NCBI RefSeq assembly: GCF_001194135.2
Contig: NC_068983.1
Coordinates: 157,506,764-157,570,763, forward strand
DNA from: Octopus bimaculoides
Taxonomy: Eukaryota
Direction of reading: 5' to 3'
DNA length: 64,000 bases
Shown here: positions 8,785 through 64,000 of the stretch, piece after piece
Layout of the letters: each line of letters starts with the position of its first letter
How positions within the stretch are numbered: the stretch's first letter is position 1
Notes under the pieces: generated by a model
The model's database searches: none
What the model saw: the letters and a program-made list of their open reading frames with translations, nothing else
What the model was told of the DNA's origin: nothing
Program-made: the position numbers and the translations under genes

Positions 8785-9113
8785 AGGTTTTGCTTTCATA
8801 TCTGGAATTTCTTCTCTAACTTTACTATAAATTCAGTAAAAAGAACTAGATAATCAGCAAGTAGGATTTCTCAAGAATCGTCAGCCTCAAGTTCCTCTAT
8901 GAGGGCCTGTAAATTTATGATAAATTGAGAGGGTTGAGGACTGTGCCTTGATAAACTTCTACCTTCATGCTAAAGTCATTATGACCATCACTTTACTGAC
9001 ATCACCTTTGTATATAGTTTGTACAGCTTTCAAAAGCCATTCACATACTGACATGCTGACAAATACTTAGTGGTTTACTCTTAATCAAAAATTTCTCTTG
9101 CAGTTACCTCATG
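8785..9113 (-). repeat. 329-bp near-identical copy of the decayed RTE reverse-transcriptase fragment at 23173-23502
   Basis: The two copies match base for base except one 1-nt indel (TAT/TATT before GAGGGCC). The minus-strand translation resembles RT (VCEWLLKAVQTIYKGDVSKV..VYQGTVLNPL..). Confidence 0.9.
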
Positions 9114-11927: not shown

Positions 11928-13404
11928 TCTATATATATAAAAATGAGAATGTGTGTCTGTCTGTCTGTCTGTCTGTGTGAATCCCTAAAACTCGAGAACT
12001 ACGCAACCAATTCCATTCAAATTTTACAGATGCCTTACTTAGGGTTCCAGTTGTGTTTTAGTCAAAAAAAATTTTAACTTCTTGCAGAGTTCGAGCCCAC
12101 GGCAACATAATATCTCCTCCACTATTTAAGTATTACGTGTCAAAAGTGAAACAAAAACACTCATGTCAAATACTTTCACTTTAAAAATGAACCTATTCCA
12201 CTAACTGAAACAATCACATTTTGATACTGTAATGACAGATACTTTCAGAGAGAGAGAGAAAGAGAGAGAGAGAGAAAGAGAGAAAGAGAGAGAGAGAGAA
12301 AGAGAGANNNNNNNNNNNNNNNNNNNNNNNNNNNNNNNNNNNNNNNNNNNNNNNNNNNNNNNNNNNNNNNNNNNNNNNNNNNNNNNNNNNNNNNNNNNNN
12401 NNNNNNNNNNNNNNNNNNNNNNNNNNNNNNNNNNNNNNNNNNNNNNNNNNNNNNNNNNNNNNNNNNNNNNNNNNNNNNNNNNNNNNNNNNNNNNNNNNNN
12501 NNNNNNNNNNNNNNNNNNNNNNNNNNNNNNNNNNNNNNNNNNNNNNNNNNNNNNNNNNNNNNNNNNNNNNNNNNNNNNNNNNNNNNNNNNNNNNNNNNNN
12601 NNNNNNNNNNNNNNNNNNNNNNNNNNNNNNNNNNNNNNNNNNNNNNNNNNNNNNNNNNNNNNNNNNNNNNNNNNNNNNNNNNNNNNNNNNNNNNNNNNNN
12701 NNNNNNNNNNNNNNNNNNNNNNNNNNNNNNNNNNNNNNNNNNNNNNNNNNNNNNNNNNNNNNNNNNNNNNNNNNNNNNNNNNNNNNNNNNNNNNNNNNNN
12801 NNNNNNNNNNNNNNNNNNNNNNNNNNNNNNNNNNNNNNNNNNNNNNNNNNNNNNNNNNNNNNNNNNNNNNNNNNNNNNNNNNNNNNNNNNNNNNNNNNNN
12901 NNNNNNNNNNNNNNNNNNNNNNNNNNNNNNNNNNNNNNNNNNNNNNNNNNNNNNNNNNNNNNNNNNNNNNNNNNNNNNNNNNNNNNNNNNNNNNNNNNNN
13001 NNNNNNNNNNNNNNNNNNNNNNNNNNNNNNNNNNNNNNNNNNNNNNNNNNNNNTTTCTGCAATGTGGTGCATAAATTGTCAAGTAAATGAGACGCATCTT
13101 TGCCTCCAATGATTCACTTGCAAAGTGTTGAGTAAAATTATTTCGTTGCAGACCTCCTTTGAGTCTTTTTATTATCACTGCGACACACATAGTCCCCAGT
13201 TGGTAACATTGATTTCAAGGCCCTCCTAGATGAGAGACTGGCATTCCACTTAATGTCTATGTTCCATGCTGGCATGGATTGGAGAGTTATTAATGTAGAA
13301 ATATGGTATCGTAGCTACTAACAGTTGAGGGTTGCGTAGTCTAGACGGCGTTTTTAGATTTCATTATTCTCTTTAACCCGGGCAAAGCCGGGTATTTCTG
13401 CTAG
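11928..13404 (+). mobile_element. Non-autonomous Helitron with both termini, inserted between A and T; interior partly an assembly gap
   Basis: 5' A|TCTATATATATAAAAATGAG followed by (TGTC)n. 3' hairpin CCCGGGCAAAGCCGGG, then TATTTCTG-CTAG (13401-13404), then T. (GA)n tract and N gap at 12308-13053. Confidence 0.85.
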
Positions 13405-22845: not shown

Positions 22846-23502
22846 TAATATACATTCAGAACAACCATTAATTATGTCACCTTGGCAACAAAAACTATTA
22901 ACTACTTTTAGTGAGCTTTCTGAGCATTTAAAAGAATTTATTTCTGGTGCACTGTTAGTGCTTATTGTCACTGTTGCATGTGTCACATACAAAGCCCACC
23001 TGTGATTCTGATACACCTCTTGTGTATGCATAATTTACATTAAGTATAGCATGCAGAGTTCCTACCAACTGAGCCAGACCATTTTCCTTGACAGTACCAG
23101 GGTCCTGTTTTTTTTTTACTACTTATTAGCACCATAGTCTTTGCTAAGTTTATCTTAAAGTCTCTCAATTCTAGGTTTTGCTTTCATATCTGGAATTTCT
23201 TCTCTAACTTTACTATAAATTCAGTAAAAAGAACTAGATAATCAGCAAGTAGGATTTCTCAAGAATCGTCAGCCTCAAGTTCCTCTATTGAGGGCCTGTA
23301 AATTTATGATAAATTGAGAGGGTTGAGGACTGTGCCTTGATAAACTTCTACCTTCATGCTAAAGTCATTATGACCATCACTTTACTGACATCACCTTTGT
23401 ATATAGTTTGTACAGCTTTCAAAAGCCATTCACATACTGACATGCTGACAAATACTTAGTGGTTTACTCTTAATCAAAAATTTCTCTTGCAGTTACCTCA
23501 TG
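22846..23502 (-). mobile_element. Decayed RTE-clade LINE reverse-transcriptase fragment
   Basis: Minus-strand translation parallels the better-preserved RTE at 23945-24818 (..KKFQI*KQNL..SLKVVNSFCCQGDIINGCSE versus KLEVVDSFRYLGDQVSSGGGCAE). Confidence 0.7.
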
Positions 23503-23944
23503 AGAAGATGGCATTTGTGGTACCCCTTGAGGGTATAAAACCAAACTGCATCTTATCTAGGTTAGTTCTGTTCCTAATCAATTGTACTATAACTCTTTCC
23601 TTGAGCTTCGTAGCCTGATGCAATAACTTGATGGCTTTGTAATTTTTTCTTGCTAGTAAATATCTCCTTTACCCTAGTAGCAGCTCACATTCACATTGGT
23701 ACTGTTATACCAGTCAGTGGGCACAATATTTCCCTGTGTTACCTGATTTGTGACCGTTTGGCATGTATCCCATTTTGCCAGATATTTTGATCATCTCAGT
23801 GACTATCCCAGTTAGTCCAGTAGCTTTTCCTACTTTTATATCTAATCCCTATCTACCATACTGTTGTCAATTTGAGTTGCTGTTCCCCCACTTGGGTCAA
23901 TATTATAGCTTTATGTATGTGTGTGTATATATATATATTCATAA

Positions 23945-24818
23945 TTGACAGGGTCCCCCGATCCCTTATCTGGTGGTCAATGAGGAAACTAGGGATAGAT
24001 GAATGGTTAGTGAGAGCTGTGCGAGACATGTACAGGGAAGCTGTCAGTAAGGTGAGGGTTGGCAATGAGTACAGTGAAGAATTCCGGGTTGAGGTAGGGG
24101 TCCACCAAGGTTCAGTCCTCAGCCCCCTCCTATTTATCATAGTCCTCCAGGCGATAACACAGGAATTCAAGACAGAATGCCCCTGGGAGCTCCTCTATGC
24201 TGATGACCTAGCTCTAATTGCTGAGTCACTATCAGAACTAGAGGAGAAGTTTCAGGTGTGAAAGCAAGGATTAGAATCAAAGGGCCTAATAAGTAGGAAA
24301 GTAGGCAAACCACAAACCCCTTCAGGTAGATGGCCCTGCTCGATCAGTAGAAAAGGTGTAGGTAGAAACTCTATAAGACGATGTCCCCAGTGTAAGCTAC
24401 GTACACATAAGAGGTGCAGCAATATGAAAGGAAGGCTAACTAGCAAGATAGTTTTTGTATGTGGCAGATGCTCAGGAGCAATAAACACTGAAAATATGCA
24501 GAGAACTACTTCTGCCACATTCCAGGGAGAAAAACTAGAAGTAGTTGATAGCTTCCGTTACCTAGGTGACCAAGTCAGTAGCGGAGGAGGGTGCGCTGAA
24601 AGTATAGCTGCTAGAATAAGAATAGCCTGGGCAAAGTTCAGAGAGCTCTTACCTTTGCTGGTGACAAAGGGCCTCTTGCTCAGAGTAAAAGGCAGACTGT
24701 ATGATGCATGTGTACGAACAGCCATGCTACATGGCAGTGAAACAGGGGCTGTGACTGCTGAGGACATGCATAAGCTTGCAAGAAATGAAGCCAGTATGCT
24801 CCAATGGATATGTAATGT
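23945..24818 (+). mobile_element. RTE-clade LINE ORF fragment (RT core with PHD-like Cys-rich insert), one in-frame stop
   Basis: DRVPRSLIWWSMRKLGIDEWLV..GVHQGSVLSPLLF..LLYADDLALIA..FQV* then, in the same frame, KQGLESKGL..WPCSISRKGVGRNSIRRCPQCKLRTHKRCSNMKG..CGRC..FRYLGD..LYDACVRTAMLHGSE. Confidence 0.92.
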
Positions 24819-25499
24819 AAGTGTCTCTTCAAATTGAGAATTGTTTGCAGAAAACAGTTATTTACACTCAAGTTAACCTTGGTGAAGCAGTTGTGATGGA
24901 AACCTTCCATCAGCAATCATTTGCCTTTTCATGTATCAAAGATATAACCTCTAATGTATACTTCCAAGTGATTGATTTTGGCACTATGTATTTGTAAGTA
25001 TAAACTAGAGTAATCGTACAGAAATTCGAAGTCAATATTCTTTTCTACTCTAGGAACAAGGCCTGAAATTAAATCAACCCCAGTATGGAAGGGGTACTTA
25101 ATTTATCAACCCCAAAAGGATGAAAGGCAAAGTCAACCTTGGCGGAATGTGAACTTGGAATGTAAAAACAGACGGAAATTTGGAGTCAATATTGACTAAT
25201 TGATGAATTTGTAACAGATTTGATCATTCAAAACATAGATTCAATTACTTAAAAGCTGTGATAGAAAAATTTATAATGGAATAGATTTTAAATCAGTTAA
25301 TTAGTTAATAGGCAAAGCACACAAGAAAATTATGCAAATTAACTTCAACTTTAAAAAGAGGAAAAGGCAAATTCAAACCTTCACAACCATTAATTTCTAG
25401 CTTTAACACATACTAATAAACAGCCATTTCCCTAAACTTGGAGAATTGGCTATAACCATTGCCTCCTACATCCAATGCCTTGTAAAAAAAAAAAAAAAA

Positions 25500-25746
25500 G
25501 CGCCCTTTTAAAGCCTAGCCAGGCTCATGGGCCCGGTTTCCCAGTTTCAATGGCGTATGTGTTCCCCAGCTGGATGGGACGCCAGTCCACCGCAGCGTTA
25601 CTCATTTTTGCCAGCTGAGTGGACTGGAGCAACGCGAAATGAAGTGTTTTGCTCAAGAACACAACGTGTCGCCCGGTCCTGGAACCGAAACCACAATCTT
25701 ACAATCATGGTGCTGACATCCTAACCACTAAGCCACGCGCCTCCAC
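25500..25746 (-). mobile_element. tRNA-derived SINE, family D
   Basis: Minus strand GTGGAGGCGCGTGGCTTAGTGGTTAGG (A box)..GGTTTCGGTTCC..GTTGTGTTCTTGAGCAAAACACTT..TGGACTGGCGTCCCATCCAG..CTTTAAAAGGGCGC. Second copy at 33984-34230. Confidence 0.85.
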
Positions 25747-32900: not shown

Positions 32901-33983
32901 TTTTTATGTTCATTTTCTCCTGCTTGCATGACTTGGCCAGGCCTTCTCCAGCATAGCAGCTTGCCACTTGTTGCCTTCCAATGTTATCTACTTAATGAGA
33001 CTGAGTCTGTTGAGATGGTCTTCAGTATGTCCTCCCAGGTTTTTTTCCACAGCTACCTTCCACTTGCATGCATTAATACTTCTTTGCTCAGCTGTTATCA
33101 TCCAAACACATTAAATGTCCAACCTACTATAATCTTTTCTCCTGAGCACAACATTTGATTCCTTATATCCAATTTTTCTCTCAGTTCATTTGTACATTAT
33201 TCATGTACTTTAACATTACACACCCAGCTGTGCATGCTATATTTTTTTCCAGCCTCTGCCCAAAGCTTATATTTTGCTTACTATGCAACATTACACTTTA
33301 TACACAAGCACCATATGATTTACCCTTTATTCAAACAGAGAATCTCTCTCTTGCTAGTAGACATGAATTTAGATAAATATGTTAAGGTAATGTACTGAAT
33401 GGAATAGATTGTGAGTTAAGTCTTTTGTAGGAAATTTGTTGTCTCAAAACACTTTTATTCTAGATATTTCAGCTAGCTATCGAGAACAGGTGTCAGACTT
33501 GTAATCACCCAATGATAATGTAAGGTTACGCAACTGATTCTGTCACCAATATTTTTAACTTGATCAAACCTATATGGTTCTGTTGTGCTTTTAAAATTTT
33601 ATAGACAGTGGAGGATGGATAATCTTCCTGATCCTTACAGGCCCTCCCAAACTGATACAGTTGATTATATTTGGATTAAAGTTTTGTAGGCTGACAACCT
33701 TATGAAGCAAAATGTGATGCAAATGGATGAAGATAGCTGATAGCTGAATAAAAAAGTACTGATCACTTAGTGTAAATTGAGCTTAAAGTAGAGGAGGCTG
33801 ATGAAGATATAGGACAAGCTTTTTCCTAATATCACTTCACTTTCTTACTACCTGAATGCATTTCTTTTGTTATCCATCCTACCTTCTTTAATACTGTCCT
33901 CGATACCCACTTTTTGCATTGATCACCTTCAACCACATCTCTCTCTCTCACTAGTCTTTTCCCTACTTAAATAAATAATAAAT

Positions 33984-34230
33984 GCGCCCTTTTAAAGCCT
34001 AGCCAGGCTCATGGGCCCGGTTTCCCAGTTTCAATGGCGTATGTGTTCCCCAGCTGGACGGGATGCCAGTCCATCGCAGTGTTACTCATTTTTACCAGCT
34101 GAGTGGACTGGAACAACATGAAATGAAATGTTTTGCTCAAGAACAAAACGCGTCGCCCGGTCCAGGAATCGAAACCACAATCTTACGATCATGGTACTGA
34201 CACCCTAACCACTAGGCCATGCGCCTCCAC
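33984..34230 (-). mobile_element. SINE family D copy
   Basis: Close match to 25500-25746. A/T-rich tail TTAAATAAATAATAAAT at about 33967-33983. Confidence 0.85.
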
Positions 34231-40698: not shown

Positions 40699-41396
40699 GG
40701 GCTTTCCTATAAGGTGTTATNNNNNNNNNNNNNNNNNNNNNNNNNNNNNNNNNNNNNNNNNNNNNNNNNNNNNNNNNNNNNNNNNNNNNNNNNNNNNNNN
40801 NNNNNNNNNNNNNNNNNNNNNNNNNNNNNNNNNNNNNNNNNNNNNNNNNNNNNNNNNNNNNNNNNNNNNNNNNNNNNNNNNNNNNNNNNNNNNNNNNNNN
40901 NNNNNNNNNNNNNNNNNNNNNNNNNNNNNNNNNNNNNNNNNNNNNNNNNNNNNNNNNNNNNNNNNNNNNNNNNNNNNNNNNNNNNNNNNNNNNNNNNNNN
41001 NNNNNNNNNNNNNNNNNNNNNNNNNNNNNNNNNNNNNNNNNNNNNNNNNNNNNNNNNNNNNNNNNNNNNNNNTATTCCTGTCTGAAGTATCGTCCGATAC
41101 TTCAGACTTATCGTCCGATGAATTTACTTTGTTGACATTCTTCATCGACAGAATTTTTATTCCTTTCAACCTTTCAGTCAAGTCCGCCTTTCTTCCAGTA
41201 ACATACTGTCCATATAATCTTAAATATTTCTTTAACTCAGGCACAGTAAATACTTCGATAGCTGAATCATCAAGCTGCTTTATATCCATGATAAGACGTA
41301 AAACAATAACAATGGCGTGGGTTAGCCTCCGGAAGTTTAATTATCTACATGGAGCGCCGCCTAGCCAAGGGAGATAACCTACTTATAGGAAAGCCC
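40699..41396 (-). mobile_element. TIR DNA transposon with GGGCTTTCCTATAAG termini, TA/TATA target duplication, encoding a SAP-domain ORF; interior partly a gap
   Basis: TATA|GGGCTTTCCTATAAG at 40695-40713 and CTTATAGGAAAGCCC|TATA at 41382-41400 are exact reverse complements. ORF from 41289 (minus). Confidence 0.85.
41072..41289 (-). CDS. SAP-domain protein N-terminus (transposon-encoded; runs into the assembly gap)
   Basis: MDIKQLDDSAIEVFTVPELKKYLRLYGQYVTGRKADLTERLKG fits the SAP pattern TVxELKxxLRxxGxxxxGxKADLxERL. Confidence 0.7.
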
Positions 41397-41837
41397 TATA
41401 CACGCATACACTTTGTTCTCATAACGGCCTGTCTATTATTCTGTATACATGACGCACACAGACACACACATGCTAACCTATCGATAAAACTTCCCTCTCA
41501 AATATCCTACTCGGTTGTATAGTGATGTCAGGGTTACCATTTTATAGTGGTAATGTCGATTAAATGACACACTATAATTTAATGAGTATGAGAGAAAGAA
41601 GGGTCACCATCTTGTACATAACAAGAAAATAGAAATTCGCGAGACATTTGTAATAAGTCATAGCATATTTATTACTGGAGGGAATGCATTAACATATAAG
41701 GTTAATTGAAGGAAACCTTGTAACATTACATGAATATATTCTGTTTGCAATCCCATGTCTCCAAGTGAGGCGAAAGTGCGCACGAGCTAGTGTGCATGTG
41801 GTAGCTTGGCCTAATGCACGTCGAAGAATCAACAAGC

Positions 41838-41880
41838 ACTGAATGGCGCGAATTTAGAAATTCCTTCCTTTATATAAAGG
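41838..41880 (-). promoter_or_regulatory. TATA box (TATATAAA, 41876-41869) and TCAGT initiator (predicted +1 at 41840) of the LTR
   Basis: Palindromic CCTTTATATAAAGG at 41867-41880 lies 37 bp downstream of the HSE on the minus strand. TCAGTG occupies 41842-41837, and AATAAA is at 41673-41668. Confidence 0.7.
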
Positions 41881-41913
41881 ATGCACCGGAAGTCCCCGAC
41901 TTCCACGTAAACT

Positions 41914-41948
41914 GGAAGCTTCCAGAATGTTCGAGAACTTTCTAGAAG
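41914..41948. promoter_or_regulatory. Heat-shock element, seven perfect alternating nGAAn units
   Basis: gGAAgcTTCcaGAAtgTTCgaGAActTTCtaGAAg. GAA at 41915, 41925, 41935 and 41945; TTC at 41920, 41930 and 41940. Confidence 0.9.
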
Positions 41949-42079
41949 CTCGAGGGAGATTACTCTCGTTAAATCCCTTTTTTGTTTTGCTTTCTAACGT
42001 GACCGCCAGGGTTCACTACAGTTGTGTCTCTTCTCCTTTTCCTCACTGGCACCTTACATGTATTATTATAGCCTTCTGA

Positions 42080-42835
42080 ACAGAGTCATTATTAGATGGT
42101 TTCACCATGCTTCACCTCGACCATGTATAGATGCACAACCTGCTGGCTGCATGTGGTGCGTGAAACCATTTTCAAAGATTCTTATTTCAATTTTAGCACC
42201 AAATACTCAGGTGACTGGGTTGATGCCATTTCTGTGTCTAACGTTGGTGGCCTACTCAGCTTGGACGAATTTCACGTCTCCATTGCCCTCAGAGTGGGAG
42301 CTGACATCTGCATGGGTTTGAGCTGTTGTTGTGGCAAGCTCTTCGACTCCACAGGCCTCTATAGCCTTTCTTGCTGCCTGAATGCTGGTCACTTCGCGTG
42401 TCACACGGAGTTAAACCTTGTACTCAGGAGGAGCTTGGCCTGTGCAAACGTCCCCTCCATCTTGGAACCATCTGGGTTGTCCAGATGTGATGAGAAAAGA
42501 CCTGACGGCTTCACTCTGTGTCCCTGGTTGAGAGGCTGATGCCTTGTCTGGGATGTTACAGTTAGTGACTCCTTTGCTTCTCATATCTTGGATGCTGCGG
42601 CCAGGGCGAGATCTACAGCTTCTGTAGCTGAACAGAACAAAATCCTGAAGTACTGCGATCTGTTGGCCAACTACATTTTCCATCCTGTGGCATTCGAGAT
42701 GTTTGGTAGGGGTTGGACAACTGACTGTGATATTCCTGTCTTCACTGGCAGCTCGTCAAGCAGAGGAAACTTGTGAAGCTTGTGAGGGCACTTCGTTGTT
42801 CCAGTGCATCAGCCTTGCCATCACCCGCGGCAACC
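42080..42835 (+). mobile_element. CRE-clade non-LTR retrotransposon 3' fragment (zinc finger plus restriction-like endonuclease)
   Basis: [99 protein letters not shown], with the RPDG..WDVT endonuclease motif. Confidence 0.85.
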
Positions 42836-42855
42836 CAGGTTCGAAATTTCCCCAA

Positions 42856-42903
42856 GACACCTGAAGAAGGCTAGAGGGTATATCAGCTGAAACGTTGTTA
42901 ACA
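42856..42903 (+). ncRNA. Degenerate minimal hammerhead ribozyme motif in a Penelope-type repeat
   Basis: GACAC-CTGAAGA-AGGCTAGA..TCAGCT-GAAAC-GTT. The 3' strand of stem I appears eroded. Confidence 0.4.
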
Positions 42904-43414
42904 ACAAACAAGATGAGGACAAATATCTGTCGAATGTAAATAATGTACATAATTCCTCATCTCTTAAATATAGAACAGTCATTATAAAGGTTTCCCAACG
43001 CCCCAAAATTTTCAACCTAAGGGGGTGAATTGCTTTTTTTTGNNNNNNNNNNNNNNNNNNNNNNNNNNNNNNNNNNNNNNNNNNNNNNNNNNNNNNNNNN
43101 NNNNNNNNNNNNNNNNNNNNNNNNNNNNNNNNNNNNNNNNNNNNNNNNNNNNNNNNNNNNNNNNNNNNNNNNNNNNNNNNNNNNNNNNNNNNNNNNNNNN
43201 NNNNNNNNNNNNNNNNNNNNNNNNNNNNNNNNNNNNNNNNNNNNNNNNNNNNNNNNNNNNNNNNNNNNNNNNNNNNNNNNNNNNNNNNNNNNNNNNNNNN
43301 NNNNNNNNNNNNNNNNNNNNNNNNNNNNNNNNNNNNNNNNNNNNNNNNNNNNNNNNNNNNNNNNNNNNNNNNNNNNNNNNNNNNNNNNNNNNNNNNNNNN
43401 NNNNNNNNNNNNNN

Positions 43415-47954: not shown

Positions 47955-48165
47955 GCGAGCTGGCAGAACTGTTAGCACGCCGGGTAAAAATGCTTAGTGG
48001 CAGTTCGTCTGTCTTTATGTTCTGAGTTCAAATTTCCCCGAGGTCGACTTTGCCTTTCATCTCTTTGGTTTCAATAAAATATGTACCAGTTGAACACTGG
48101 TGTCGATGTAATCAACTTAGCCCCTACTCCAAACCTGTTGACCTTGTGCCAAAATTTGAAACCAA
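47955..48165 (+). mobile_element. SINE family A copy
   Basis: GCGAGCTGGCAGAACTGTTAGCACG..GAGTTCAAATTTCCCCGAGGTCGACTTTGCC.. Confidence 0.8.
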
Positions 48166-49719: not shown

Positions 49720-50300
49720 GCCGAAATAATATCTTCGACTCTATAGGCCCCAATAGCCTTTCTTGCCACCAGAATGCTGGTTGCTTCATGTGTCATACAG
49801 AGTTAAACCTGATACTCAAGAAGAGCTTGGCCCAGGCAAACATCTCCTCCATCTTGGAACCATCTAGATTGTCCAGATATGATGGGAAGAAATCTGACGG
49901 CTTCACCATGTATCTCTGGTCACAAGGCAGATGCCTTGTCTGGGATGACAGTGAGCGGCTTCTTTGCTTCTGCTCATATCTTGGATGCTGTAGTCAGGGT
50001 GATCCACAGCTTCAGCAGCTGAGTGGAACAAAATCCTGAAGTACTGTGATCTGTCGGCCAACTACATTTTCCATCCTGTGGGGTTTGAGACGTTTGGTGG
50101 GGTCAGACCACTAACTGTGAGATTCCTGTCTTCACTGGTAACTTACTTTGCAGGGGTAACTGGTGAGGCTCTTGAGGCGCTTGGCTGTTCTAGCACATCA
50201 GCCTCACCATCATCCGTGGCAGCACTTCAAGCGTGCTGGCGTGTCTCAATAGCCATTAGAGAGGTTTCGCTGTGCCCCCAAGTTTTGAACCCAAGGTGGT
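49720..50300 (+). mobile_element. Second CRE-clade 3' fragment, related to 42080-42835
   Basis: FDSIGPNSLSCHQNAGCFMCHTELNLILKKSLAQANISSILEPSRLSRYDGKKSDGFTMYLWSQGRCLVWD, and nucleotide similarity through AAAATCCTGAAGTACTG..TTTTCCATCCTGTGG. Confidence 0.8.
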
Positions 50301-52156: not shown

Positions 52157-52641
52157 TACCATTTATTAATTGTGTGTTACTTTAATTAGTGCTGTTTGAT
52201 TTTTTTTTAATATTTTGAGAATGATTAGTAATTATGATAAAAACAATAACTTAGTAATAAAAAACGCCCACTTGAATGACACCGTAAAGATGTTCATTAA
52301 TTTATTGAGGTAATGAAAAGTTGTAAACAATCCGATAAAATCATTTAAAAAGTAATCACAACATAAATAAATAAACACTAATTAACTATAGTTGAGATTA
52401 GTGGGCATGGTTGATGAGCTTAAATAAATAAACACTATTTAACTATTGTTGAGATCAGTGGGCATTGTTGATTTACTTGTTCAAAGCAAAAGAGATCATT
52501 GTTGTAGAAACAGAAAAAGAAGCGAAACAAGTTATGAACAGCCCATTTGTATAATGTCATCTTCAGGCATGGGTGCTTGGGTGCCTCATGGGTCTAGCGC
52601 TCTAAAGCTAAACTGTATATAGTGTGGTGGTTTGCTTATCA

Positions 52642-53245
52642 GTATTTCGTCTGCCCTTACGTTCTGAGTTCAAATTCCGTCGAGGTCGACTTTGCCTTTC
52701 ATCCCTTCGGGGTCGATAAATTAAGTACCAGTTACGCACTGGCGTCGATGCAATCGACTTAATCCCTTTGTCTGTTCTTGTTTATCCCCTCTATGTTTAG
52801 CCCCGTGTGGGCAATAAAGAAATAAGAAACGTTAGCACGTCGGGTGAAATGCTTAGCGGTATTTCGTCTGTCTTTACGTTCTGAGTTCAAATTCCGCCGA
52901 GGTCGACTTTGCCTTTCATCCTTTCGGGGTCGATAAATTAAGTACCAGTTACGCACTGGCGTCGATGCAATCGACTTAATCCCTTTGTCTGTTCTTGTTT
53001 ATCCCCTCTATGTTTAGCCCCGTGTGGGCAATAAAGAAATAAGAAACGTTAGCACGTCGGGTGAAATGCTTAGTGGTATTTCGTCTGTCTTTACGTTCTG
53101 AGTTCAAATTCCGCCGAGGTCGACTTTGCCTTTCATCCTTTCGGGGTCAATAAATTAAGTACCAGTTGGGTACTAGGGTCGATGTAATCGACTGGTCCCT
53201 CCATCAAAATTCCGGGCCTTGTACCTAGAGTAGAAAAGAATAAAT
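52642..53245 (+). mobile_element. Tandem array of SINE family A, 217-bp period, about 2.7 units
   Basis: GTATTTCGTCTG recurs at 52642, 52859 and 53076. Each tail AATAAAGAAATAAGAA runs directly into the next unit's ACGTTAGCACG. Confidence 0.9.
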
Positions 53246-53439
53246 ACTGTAGGCCTCAGGGTTAATATATAGTTTAACTCCATGTCCCCCCCCCCCGCAA
53301 AAAAAAGCCCAGTCTAGTAGGTGTAAAAAAATGTGTAGAAAATGAATATGAAAACAAAAATTTGCGCAAACGAACTGGATGTGGAGAGGATCCAATGTGA
53401 TATCTGTTTTACAGCCTTGTGACCAAAGAATTTTACACT

Positions 53440-60635: not shown

Positions 60636-61251
60636 AATAACTTACGCCCAGGGGTTAGTACTTATAGAGAAAAGTCAGCAAGTTTTTTCTTATAACCACC
60701 CTAATCATGAACATAACATAATAATTACAAGAGGCGTTTACAATGAGCTCTGTATGTTTGTGTCTCCTTGTCCTGACATGATAGTTGTAAAATGGCTGCC
60801 ACTGTCATACAAGCAGCGTCATTCATTTTCAACATTCTGTAAAATATGTCTGGATATTTCATGTATGTGGTGATTGAAGAAGCTATTTCACCCCCAAATC
60901 TTTCATATAACAACAATTTATTGTTTATATTCAGTTTTGAGTTCTTAAATAACAACTTTTGAGAAGTCAGTTGTAAACTGAATCAACTCCAATATAATAT
61001 CAATACTTGTTTTATTGTGTCAATGAATTAAAGGATTAAACTAATCTCTCTAAAATTTTAATTGTGTACTAAAATACAGTAATATTGTAAAAACTCATAG
61101 GCATTTTCTCTGTCCTTCTTATAATCAGTTTTATAAAGTAGCTAATTTAATGTGTTATAATTTTACATTTTTATTTATATAGTTTGTATCTGCTATATAA
61201 AATTGAAAGGTTGCGATCAATTTGAATATTTTTCTTGTTTTCTACTTCCAG

Positions 61252-61412
61252 AAACTTCTATCCTTTCCAGCAGCTAGGTTTCCCTCTTCACTTTGTTATG
61301 TTTACTTCAACATTAAAACTCTTATGTAGTCCTGAACAGGCTAACTACTGGCTACCAAAAGCATCCAACTTAGAGATACTTGGATGTTATGCTCAAACTG
61401 AATTGGGACATG
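61252..61412 (+). CDS. ACOX1: ACOX1-like coding exon 3: NFYPFQQLGFPLHFVMFTSTLKLLCSPEQANYWLPKASNLEILGCYAQTELGH(G)
   Basis: TTCTACTTCCAG| at 61251 and G|GTGAGT at 61413. 161 nt, phase 2/1. Contains the acyl-CoA oxidase signature YAQTELGHG. The gene continues beyond the window. Confidence 0.95.
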
Positions 61413-63446: not shown

Positions 63447-63902
63447 AATCATCATCATCATCATACATCCCATTCTCTGCTGGCATGGGTTAGATGGTTT
63501 GACAGGAGCTGGTTAGGCAGAAGACTGCGCCAGGCTTTGCGGTTTTTACAGCTGGAGGCCCTTCTTAACTCTAACCACCAAACAGAGTGGAGTGAATGCT
63601 TTTCACGTGGCATCAGCACATGGTATCGTTTTTACAGCTGGAAGCCCTTCCAAATGCCAACACCTTTACAGTGTAGATTGGATGCTTTTTATGTGGCACC
63701 AGCACCGGCAAGACCACCAAGTAACTTGCAAGACAAAAATCCTTTGAGAGGGTAGGGTTTATTGGAGGAGGTGACCTCGTGCAAAGAGAATAATCTTGAT
63801 ACAGTAATAATAATTACACTCTACTTGACACTGAGAAAATTTTTGTCTTCTTTGTACATTCAATTGTTGGACTTGTTACCATTGTTACTATAGTATAATA
63901 AG

Positions 63903-64000
63903 GTGGTGAGCTGACAGAATCGTTAGCACGTCAGGCAAAATGCTTAATGGCATTTTGTCCATCCTTACATTCTGAGTTCAAATTCCACTGAGGCTGACTT
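63903..64000 (+). mobile_element. SINE family A 5' part (truncated by the window end)
   Basis: GGTGGTGAGCTGACAGAATCGTTAGCACG..CTGAGTTCAAATTCC. Confidence 0.75.

What the first reader, a model, noticed from the sequence alone, without database searches (positions are those of the whole stretch)
41518..42020. Solo LTR carrying a complete heat-shock promoter (7-unit perfect HSE, TATA, Inr, polyA): candidate heat-activated retrotransposon in a cephalopod
Seen: a 503-bp block with TGTAGTGA..TCACTATA termini (minus strand) and a GTTG direct repeat on both sides, i.e. a clean solo LTR. Inside, in U3-R-U5 order, are gGAAgcTTCcaGAAtgTTCgaGAActTTCtaGAAg (41948-41914; 21 specified bases in perfect 5-bp phase), an ETS-like CCGGAAGT (41886-41893) with its inverted partner GACTTCC, TATATAAA 37 bp further on, TCAGT with +1 at 41840, and AATAAA at 41673-41668. 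Established: three nGAAn units bind one HSF trimer and longer arrays bind cooperatively, as in hsp70 promoters; the plant copia element ONSEN acquired HSEs in its LTR and is heat-mobilised. Inference: this is the footprint of an LTR family that captured HSF control. Full-length relatives could be heat-inducible and could spread heat-responsive promoters through the genome. I am not aware of such a family in molluscs, but could not search.
Basis: partly seen in the sequence, partly recalled or inferred. Interest (0 to 1): 0.9.

Follow-up and report, generated by a model that had tools for sequence, protein, structure and literature searches.

The report
Repeat unit carrying conserved heat-shock promoter
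A 503-base mobile-element remnant (most likely a solo LTR) belongs to a family of tens of copies, found under four species labels, whose members keep a seven-unit heat-shock-factor binding array beside a TATA box; the family was probably heat-switched when it spread, but no coding relative or heat response could be shown.

Summary
The termini, the 4-bp CAAC/GTTG duplication, the perfect 7-unit HSE (41914-41948), TATA, TCAGT and AATAAA are all there. About 9e-8 such HSE arrays are expected by chance.

Public DNA reads show the block is one copy of a dispersed family. It has tens of copies, mostly 80-95% alike, with sharp ends at exactly 41518 and 42020. The family occurs in the source organism and under three other species labels. 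This copy is present in all 13 runs of the source organism that hold it, and it sits inside another repeat whose other copies lack it.

Across the family, the 21 specified HSE bases almost never vary (1-4.5%), while the 12 spacer bases vary freely (17-24%). So the HSE is a selected family feature, not a local accident.

Not shown:
- No second LTR, no shared primer-binding site or polypurine tract, and no gag/pol.
- Sequences beyond both ends differ between copies.
- The 3' terminus is TA, not the canonical CA.
- RNA data give no start at 41840, and no heat-stress data could be identified.

Verdict: a solo-LTR-like relic of an old family that carried an HSF-type promoter. It resembles ONSEN in logic, but its membership and its heat response are unproven.

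The parts
41518..42020 (-). 503-bp repeat unit, read as a solo LTR in U3-R-U5 order on the minus strand
   Evidence: Depth of raw DNA reads laid at >=80% identity is 20-70 inside the block and about 0-3 just outside both ends. Contig alignments from organisms A, B and C start at 41518 or end at 42020; one organism D contig begins at 41513. There is no second copy in the window.
42021..42024 (-). Target-site duplication, upstream copy (CAAC on minus, GTTG on plus)
   Evidence: The family-defined ends fix the boundaries, so a 4-bp match has a chance of about 1/256.
41514..41517 (-). Target-site duplication, downstream copy (CAAC on minus, GTTG on plus)
42013..42020 (-). 5' terminal repeat TGTAGTGA
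   Evidence: Other subfamilies and other species have the same terminus: loose-end consensus ...GGGGTCACTACA on the plus strand.
41518..41525 (-). 3' terminal repeat TCACTATA. It is the inverted repeat of the 5' end at 7 of 8 bases, ending TA rather than CA.
   Evidence: No variant shared by 50% or more of reads or contig depth is listed at 41518-41525 in the family.
41914..41948 (-). Seven-unit perfect heat-shock element array (TTC/GAA units alternating every 5 bp). Four of the seven units read AGAA.
   Evidence: In the family, core bases vary at 1-4.5% and spacer bases at 17-24%.
41888..41904 (-). Palindrome GGAAGTC-ggg-GACTTCC with an ETS-like ACTTCCGG; less conserved than the HSE cores
   Evidence: Family variants at 41888, 41897 and 41898 reach 15-60%. 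Another copy keeps the palindrome (X35 loose end).
41869..41876 (-). TATA box TATATAAA, 38 bp downstream of the HSE array
   Evidence: Other copies and organism C keep it: CTTATATAAAGGAAGGAA from the loose ends.
41838..41842 (-). Initiator-like TCAGT. The predicted start is A at 41840, 34-36 bp after the TATA box.
   Evidence: Sequence only. No RNA evidence: there is no cover at 41780-41811 and at most about 3 reads at 41812-41843.
41668..41673 (-). AATAAA polyadenylation signal in the same orientation as the promoter
   Evidence: No variant at >=40% is listed here in the family. No poly(A) end was seen in RNA.
41766..41803 (-). Hypervariable segment of the family (in the predicted R region)
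   Evidence: Read depth drops to 1-6 here, and loose ends run into unlike sequence at 41766.
41073..41517 (.). Left flank: part of another, more abundant repeat into which the unit inserted
   Evidence: Depth is 150-350 at 41068-41469. Contigs of organisms A-D join about 41433-41498 to about 42019-42081 without the block.
42021..42130 (.). Right flank: continuation of the same host repeat
   Evidence: Same joints. An X1 contig with 0 differences spans 41965-42070.

Best explanation
The block is a solo LTR, or an LTR-like terminal unit, left by an old retroelement family that carried a heat-shock-factor promoter in its U3.

The proposed mechanism has three steps:
1. On heat or proteotoxic stress, HSF trimers bind cooperatively to the 7-unit nGAAn array at 41948-41914.
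2. They recruit RNA polymerase II to the TATA box 38 bp downstream, so transcription starts near 41840 on the minus strand.
3. In a full-length element this would make the genomic RNA. In this solo copy it would make a short RNA of about 170-190 nt ending after AATAAA (41673-41668), or the copy would act as a heat-responsive enhancer.

Shown here:
- Family membership, with sharp ends and a 4-bp target duplication.
- Insertion into another repeat.
- Presence in every run of the source organism that holds it.
- Selective conservation of the HSE cores across the family, seen in organisms A and C; the family itself occurs under four species labels.

Inferred:
- LTR-retrotransposon origin.
- HSF binding.
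- The start site.
- Heat induction.

The family looks old and mostly or wholly reduced to solo units.
For: - Sequence features are all present in U3-R-U5 order.
- The HSE array is far beyond chance: and 9e-8 expected.
- Raw DNA reads at >=80% identity give depth 20-70 inside 41519-42012 against about 0-3 outside. Most reads are 80-95% alike.
- The ends 41518 and 42020 recur in contigs of organisms A, B and C, and at 41513 in one organism D contig.
- The same 5' terminus, TGTAGTGA, is seen in several subfamilies.
- The locus is held at 66-84% of words by 13 runs from 9 samples of organism A.
- Zero-difference contigs span both junctions.
- Other copies of the flanking repeat lack the block.
- HSE core positions are variable at 5 of 21 against 9 of 12 for spacers (Fisher p = 0.006). 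The mean variant share is 1-4.5% against 17-24% in four runs, including organism C (Mann-Whitney p <= 0.0013).
- The TATA box is retained in other copies and in organism C.
Against: - There is no second LTR in the window.
- Loose-end consensus beyond both ends agrees at only 0.44-0.67 over 5-13 contigs or reads, so no common PBS or PPT is visible.
- A six-frame composite of the block found no predicted protein from other copies that could lead to an interior.
- The 3' terminus is TA, not CA.
- The TATA-to-initiator spacing of 34-36 bp is slightly long.
- RNA reads and contigs come from diverged copies read through inside longer transcripts. There is almost no cover at 41748-41843 and no poly(A) end.
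- Part of the spacer-versus-core contrast could come from 10-bp register shifts in a periodic array. By hand, this explains at most 3 of the 9 variable spacer positions.
- 21 weakly supported variant rows were not displayed.
Confidence: 0.55

Rival explanations
1. The family is not LTR-derived. It would be a short non-autonomous mobile element that moves as a 0.5-kb unit, for example a MITE-like derivative of an integrase-type DNA transposon that makes TGT...ACA-like ends and 4-bp duplications. It would still carry the HSE promoter.
For: - Flanks differ between copies at both ends, and no interior, PBS or PPT was found.
- It has short terminal inverted repeats and a 4-bp duplication.
- All sampled copies look like stand-alone units.
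Against: - The inverted repeats are only 8 bp, matching at 7 of 8.
- The unit has a one-directional TATA...AATAAA layout typical of U3-R-U5.
- A large excess of solo LTRs is common for old LTR families (general knowledge).
- Read-based loose ends beyond 42020 agree better (0.63-0.77) than contig-based ones (0.44), and they read GAGGG or GAGGAGGGAG next to the end. This is weakly polypurine-like.
Confidence: 0.2
2. The GAA/TTC array is not an HSF site in vivo. It would be a periodic palindromic motif kept for another reason, such as another factor or DNA structure, or simply inherited. The 'promoter' would then be a chance assembly of common AT-rich motifs.
For: - No binding or expression data exist.
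- TATA-like and AATAAA strings are frequent in DNA of about 35% GC.
- RNA shows no start at 41840.
Against: - Seven perfect units have a chance expectation of 9e-8.
- The conserved bases are exactly the ones HSF reads, while the spacers drift, in two organisms.
- The spacers differ between units, so recent slippage is excluded.
- The TATA box at the usual distance is also conserved in the family.
- Silence in unstressed tissue is what a heat-shock promoter predicts.
Confidence: 0.12
3. The HSE conservation reflects selection by the host after insertion, with copies co-opted as heat-responsive enhancers or promoters of nearby genes. It would not reflect selection on the element's own replication.
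For: - The family is old and shared under four species labels.
- One diverged copy lies in a transcript conserved between organisms A and B.
- There is precedent in Caenorhabditis Helitrons that supply HSEs (PMC6927752).
Against: - Tens of dispersed copies are unlikely to be individually constrained.
- The transcribed, conserved copy has lost the G of unit 4 (41932 C>T).
- The window copy sits inside another repeat, between assembly gaps, with no gene in sight.
Confidence: 0.1
4. The solo state is an assembly artefact: a full-length element collapsed onto one LTR in a fragmented draft scaffold.
For: The block lies in a 1,970-bp piece between two N gaps.
Against: - Independent contigs with zero differences cross both junctions into the same flanks (41470-41556; 41965-42070).
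- Near-identical reads have a depth of only about one copy.
- Both flanks belong to one repeat that is continuous in other copies.
Confidence: 0.03

Closest known systems
ONSEN (ATCOPIA78), the heat-activated Ty1/copia retrotransposon of Arabidopsis and relatives
   Same: Heat-shock elements sit in the LTR and place the element's promoter under HSF control (PMC13602373; PMC6927752 citing Cavrak 2014 and Ito 2011). Here too the HSE is a family feature located in the presumed U3.
   Different: - ONSEN is a plant element with a known coding interior and demonstrated heat-induced transcription and transposition.
- This family is in an animal genome. No interior was found, the copies are old, and no expression or binding data exist.
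- The array here (7 perfect units plus a TATA box) is an hsp70-style proximal promoter.
HSE-bearing Helitrons of Caenorhabditis
   Same: An animal transposable-element family that carries HSEs and has scattered HSF-1 binding sites through genomes of several related species (PMC6927752).
   Different: - Helitrons are rolling-circle DNA transposons without terminal repeats or target duplications of this kind.
- Their HSF-1 binding is shown by ChIP. Binding here is only predicted.
hsp70-type heat-shock gene promoters
   Same: Contiguous inverted nGAAn units a few tens of bp upstream of a TATA box, and cooperative binding of HSF trimers (established knowledge).
   Different: - No chaperone gene follows. 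The unit has its own AATAAA about 170 nt downstream and ends 150 nt later.
- It is dispersed in tens of copies with a target duplication.
- Whether the module was captured from a host gene could not be tested.
Drosophila TE families enriched for HSF sites
   Same: Animal TEs, LTR elements among them, that carry predicted or ChIP-supported HSF sites (PMC6649756).
   Different: Those are mostly single or few motifs found by genome-wide statistics, not a 7-unit perfect array with a matched core promoter conserved across a family.

Membership tests
LTR retrotransposon (solo LTR) | Dispersed multi-copy family whose copies share the same two sharp ends | tested here: met
   Depth is 20-70 inside and about 0-3 outside. 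Alignments start at 41518 or end at 42020 in organisms A, B and C, and at 41513 in one organism D contig.
LTR retrotransposon (solo LTR) | Target-site duplication of 4-6 bp directly flanking the unit | tested here: met
   CAAC at 42024-42021 and at 41517-41514. Other copies of the host repeat lack the block, although those empty sites are imprecise.
LTR retrotransposon (solo LTR) | 5'-TG...CA-3' termini within short inverted repeats | tested here: inconclusive
   The ends are TGTAGTGA...TCACTATA: TG is present, but the 3' end is TA, and the inverted repeat matches at 7 of 8. No variant shared by 50% or more restores CA in the family. TG...TA is a known non-canonical type in plants (from memory, not tested).
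LTR retrotransposon (solo LTR) | U3-R-U5 organisation: promoter and poly(A) signal in one orientation, with transcripts starting and ending inside the LTR | tested here: inconclusive
   TATA, initiator-like motif and AATAAA are in the right order. RNA shows no start near 41840 and no poly(A) end.
LTR retrotransposon (solo LTR) | Full-length relatives: two LTRs flanking a PBS, gag-pol and a PPT | tested here: inconclusive
   There is none in the window. Sequences beyond both ends are heterogeneous, with agreement of 0.44-0.67. The protein route found nothing. A whole-genome search was not possible with these tools.
HSF-controlled (hsp70-type) promoter | At least three contiguous inverted nGAAn units in 5-bp phase | tested here: met
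   Seven perfect units at 41948-41914; chance expectation 9e-8.
HSF-controlled (hsp70-type) promoter | HSE close to a core promoter | tested here: met
   TATATAAA lies 38 bp downstream and is conserved in other copies.
HSF-controlled (hsp70-type) promoter | HSF binding and heat-induced transcription | not testable with these tools
   No run could be identified as heat-stressed, and the RNA runs examined show no initiation.
ONSEN-like heat-activated LTR retrotransposon | HSE is a conserved feature of the family's LTR, not of one copy | tested here: met
   Core triplets vary at 1-4.5% and spacers at 17-24% in four runs from two organisms.
ONSEN-like heat-activated LTR retrotransposon | Heat-induced transcription, extrachromosomal DNA and new insertions; Ty1/copia interior | not testable with these tools
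   No interior was found and no stress data exist. The copies are mostly 5-20% diverged, which argues against recent activity.
MITE or integrase-type DNA transposon derivative | Terminal inverted repeats of tens of bp and no internal one-directional transcription unit | tested here: not met
   The inverted repeat is only 8 bp (7 of 8 matching), and the TATA...AATAAA layout is directional. The 4-bp duplication alone is compatible.

The most novel reading that the evidence does not exclude
An LTR retroelement family put its own promoter under heat-shock-factor control, spread tens of complete heat-shock promoters through the genomes of a group of related species before they split, and kept the HSF-contact bases under selection. 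Some copies may still fire on heat stress and lend heat responsiveness to neighbouring genes, and rare full-length copies may still be mobilised by warming. It would be an animal counterpart of ONSEN, in a lineage where none has been described in the literature searched.
Probability: 0.3. Interest if true: 0.75.

Novelty: new member of a known kind. Interest (0 to 1): 0.55.

Why it matters
If the family is really HSF-driven, it would be a clear animal case of a retroelement tying its replication to the host heat-shock response. That strategy is well documented for ONSEN in plants, and HSEs are known to ride on Helitrons in nematodes.

The family would also be a ready-made set of tens of dispersed heat-shock promoters. 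Their effect on neighbouring genes could be tested directly with heat-stress RNA-seq. This bears on how marine invertebrate genomes respond to warming.

The contrast between conserved cores and drifting spacers is already evidence that the motif was functional while the family spread.

Tried and rejected
- **Second copy or paired LTR in the window:** none (repeat finder; blastn of the block against the window).
- **Shared PBS or PPT from soft-clipped read and contig ends at 41518 and 42020:** the flanks are heterogeneous. In one search I started the stretch exactly at the end, so no loose ends were reported there. One search repeated it with flank included.
- **Fetching other copies through spurious ORF calls:** a six-frame composite of the block searched against 5.8 billion proteins gave no hit.
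- **The look-up of encoding contigs with the flanking 147-aa ORF**, to learn the record or organism: not on record.
- **Rfam on the whole window**, looking for ribozymes of Penelope-like or retrozyme elements: nothing.
- **Pfam on 10 window ORFs:** only an RVT_1 fragment at 23872-24261, unrelated to the block.
- **RNA evidence for a start at 41840 or a poly(A) end near 41650:** none. The cover comes from diverged, read-through copies.
- **Candidate LTR pairs elsewhere in the window:**
  - 25485/33969 are SINE copies with a 12-bp duplication.
  - 8785/23173 lack TG...CA ends.
- **Ten-bp register shift as the source of the spacer variation:** checked by hand. It fits at most 3 of the 9 variable spacer positions.
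- **The bacterial promoter/terminator scan** is irrelevant to a eukaryotic element.
- **Literature searches** for an HSE-bearing TE in cephalopods or molluscs found none.

Full report
**1. The observation**

Read on the minus strand, the block runs from TGTAGTGA (42020-42013) to TCACTATA (41525-41518). CAAC lies directly on both sides (42024-42021 and 41517-41514), which is GTTG on the plus strand.

Inside the block, in order, are:
- the array cTTCtaGAAagTTCtcGAAcaTTCtgGAAgcTTCc (41948-41914);
- the palindrome GGAAGTC-ggg-GACTTCC (41904-41888), with CCGGAAGT at 41886-41893 on the plus strand;
- TATATAAA (41876-41869);
- TCAGT (41842-41838), with the A at 41840;
- AATAAA (41673-41668).

The array has seven perfect alternating units, and four of them have the preferred AGAA form. 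It is unique in the window. None of 100 dinucleotide-preserving shuffles gave even a 4-unit match. Only one other 3-unit site exists in 64 kb. From base composition, 9e-8 seven-unit arrays are expected. The spacers of the repeated 10-bp units all differ (ta/ag, tc/ca, tg/gc), so the array is not a recent slippage product.

Two corrections are needed. The termini are inverted repeats at 7 of 8 positions, giving TG...TA rather than TG...CA. The window also holds no second copy of the block.

**2. It is a member of a dispersed family with sharp ends**

About 1.9 Gb of raw genomic reads was read from each of three runs of the source organism (coded organism A), roughly one-fold single-copy depth. 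Laid at >=80% identity, they give a depth of 20-70 over 41519-42012 and about 0-3 immediately outside. Most reads are 80-95% alike (for example 5/9/61/104 in the identity classes for X21). The family is therefore old and has tens of copies.

Contig alignments begin at 41518 or end at 42020 in organism A and in runs labelled as organisms B and C; the one organism D contig listed at that end begins at 41513. Diverged subfamilies keep the same 5' terminus, seen as ...GGGGTCACTACA on the plus strand. A segment at 41766-41803 is hypervariable.

The window copy differs from the family majority at about 15-25 positions. Examples are 41663, 41682, 41716, 41753, 41819, 41878, 41949 and 41983.

**3. The solo state and the insertion are real**

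The block lies in a 1,970-bp assembled piece between N gaps, so assembly collapse had to be considered. Three results argue against it:
- Independent contigs with zero differences cross both junctions: 41470-41556 and 41965-42070.
- Thirteen runs from nine samples of organism A hold 66-84% of the block's 31-mers.
- Near-identical read depth is about one copy.

Both flanks belong to another, more abundant repeat (depth 150-350 on the left). In at least seven other copies of that repeat in organism A, and in several under each of the other species labels, sequence like 41433-41498 joins sequence like 42019-42081 without the block. These empty sites are paralogous and imprecise. One lacks about 27 further bases. 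Together with the 4-bp duplication at family-defined ends (chance about 1/256), they still show an insertion.

**4. The HSE belongs to the family and its contact bases are conserved**

I laid reads and contigs on 41880-42070 and listed every variant at >=8%. Nine of the 12 spacer positions are variable: 41918, 41923, 41928, 41929, 41933, 41934, 41938, 41939 and 41943. Some of these reach 45-85%.

Only 5 of the 21 core positions are listed (41922, 41930-41932 and 41947), mostly at 15% or less (Fisher p = 0.006). The mean variant share at core and spacer positions is:

| Run | Core | Spacer |
|---|---|---|
| X1 (contigs, organism A) | 0.9% | 18.3% |
| X21 (raw reads, organism A) | 4.5% | 24.1% |
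| X23 (raw reads, organism A) | 2.4% | 17.3% |
| X18 (contigs, organism C) | 1.2% | 20.2% |

Mann-Whitney p is 0.0013 or lower in every run.

Most core losses hit unit 4, whose G lies in a CpG. Losing unit 4 still leaves two 3-unit sites.

Three caveats apply:
- 21 weakly supported variant rows were not displayed.
- Read duplicates inflate some X21 counts.
- In a periodic array, a 10-bp misregistration would mimic this pattern. By hand, such shifts predict at most three of the observed spacer changes (41943 T>G, 41938 C>T, 41933 G>T). No 10-bp indels were reported.

The TATA box is also kept in other copies and in organism C (CTTATATAAAGGAAGGAA). The ETS-like palindrome is retained but varies more.

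This pattern is what selection for HSF binding during the family's spread would leave.

**5. What could not be shown**

- *No interior.* Beyond 41518 and beyond 42020, the consensus of clipped contig ends agrees at only 0.44-0.67. The flanks therefore differ from copy to copy, and no common primer-binding site or polypurine tract is visible. Read-based consensus beyond 42020 is somewhat better (0.63-0.77) and reads ...GAGGG or ...GAGGAGGGAGTTA next to the end. That is only a faint hint of a polypurine tract.
- *No route to other copies.* A six-frame composite of the block against 5.8 billion predicted proteins gave nothing, so I could not fetch DNA of other copies.
- *No transcription from the predicted start.* No RNA run holds more than 4% of the block's words. 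Raw RNA reads and RNA contigs cover 41588-41747 and 41844-42003 from diverged copies only, and 41748-41843 has almost no cover (none at 41780-41811, at most about 3 reads at 41812-41843). The best-covered case is a diverged copy read through inside a longer transcript: 784 nt at depth 103 in X34, with an orthologue in organism B.
- *No heat data.* Silence without stress is what a heat-shock promoter predicts, but it is not evidence. No run could be identified as heat-stressed.
- *No check of the organism.* Names are coded, so 'cephalopod' is unverified.

**6. Most likely mechanism**

HSF trimers bind the array on stress and drive RNA polymerase II from the TATA box 38 bp downstream. Transcription would start near 41840. 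The TATA-to-initiator distance of 34-36 bp is slightly long.

In a full-length element this would give the genomic RNA. In this solo copy it would give an RNA of about 170-190 nt that ends after AATAAA, or an enhancer effect.

I put 0.55 on the whole statement. By component:
- family, insertion and solo state: about 0.95;
- selection on the HSE: about 0.8;
- LTR-retrotransposon origin: about 0.65-0.7;
- present-day heat inducibility of at least some copies: about 0.5.

The rivals are:
- a stand-alone non-autonomous element with 4-bp duplications (0.2);
- a non-HSF role for the array (0.12);
- host co-option as the source of the conservation (0.1; not exclusive of the main explanation);
- assembly collapse (0.03).

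**7. Comparison with what is known**

The logic matches ONSEN, whose LTR HSEs place it under HSF control in Arabidopsis (PMC13602373; PMC6927752 citing Cavrak 2014 and Ito 2011).

In animals, the closest documented case is the spread of HSEs by Helitrons in Caenorhabditis, with HSF-1 binding shown by ChIP (PMC6927752). Drosophila TEs are also enriched for HSF sites (PMC6649756).

My searches found no HSE-bearing TE family described in cephalopods or molluscs. The library is incomplete, so this is absence of evidence only.

On membership:
- The solo-LTR tests for shape, ends and duplication are met.
- The TG...CA test is only half met.
- The interior test is unmet or inconclusive.

I file it as working like an ONSEN-type HSE-LTR, not as a proven LTR retrotransposon.

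**8. Verdict**

This is a new member of a known kind (a stress-promoter-bearing terminal repeat) in a lineage where none was found in the literature searched, and with an unusually complete and selectively conserved HSE.

Interest is 0.55. It is a well-founded and cheaply testable candidate, but it is old, it lacks a coding relative, and it has no functional data.

Noticed in passing
window 41068-41469; other copies diverge at 41381-41400: The left flank is a very abundant repeat (read depth 150-350). At 41381-41400 many other copies run into a perfect palindrome, GGTTCGTCCATCGATCGATGGACGAACC. The same palindrome also interrupts some copies of the HSE family at about 41977-41991. It looks like a small, highly mobile foldback or MITE-like insert.
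   Followed up: partly
window 42789-42986: This short segment has word depth of 10^5 to 10^6 in contigs under the three other species labels. It is one of the most abundant repeats of these genomes, probably a SINE core.
   Followed up: no
family copy elsewhere in the genome (aligns to window 41588-41714 and 41837-41994): A diverged copy of the family is read through inside a longer, well-expressed transcript: an RNA contig of 784 nt at depth 103 in X34. An orthologous transcript is seen in organism B (1399-nt and 621-nt contigs in X30). This copy has lost the G of HSE unit 4 (41932 C>T). It may be an exapted UTR or lncRNA segment.
   Followed up: partly
window 8785-9113 and 23173-23502: Two direct copies of 330 nt, 99.7% identical, lie 14.4 kb apart with unrelated flanks and no TG...CA ends (AGGTTTTGC...CCTCATG). 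This could be a recent duplication or an assembly duplication. An N gap (12308-13053) lies between them.
   Followed up: partly
window 25485-25746 and 33969-34230: Two SINE-like copies are 92% alike. The first has an A-run at one end and a 12-bp target duplication, ccaatgccttgt. They are not an LTR pair.
   Followed up: yes
window 23872-24261 (+): An ORF fragment with a reverse-transcriptase domain (Pfam RVT_1, E = 4e-11). It is unrelated in sequence to the HSE block, and its class (LINE or LTR) was not determined.
   Followed up: no
window 52626-53276, also 1929-2145, 47988-48125, 63901-64000: A 217-bp unit containing a tRNA-like SINE core (...GTTCTGAGTTCAAATTCCGCCGAGGTCGACTT) occurs three times in tandem at 52626-53276 and as dispersed copies elsewhere. 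Rfam and the gathering thresholds gave no hit.
   Followed up: no
window 61246-61258: The only other perfect 3-unit HSE in the window (TTCCAGAAACTTC); about 0.85 are expected by chance.
   Followed up: no
window 42340-42832 and 49732-50221: The right flank of the block contains a further repeat with an 81% identical copy 7.4 kb away. It overlaps a 147-aa ORF (42096-42539) with no Pfam match and no gene on record.
   Followed up: partly
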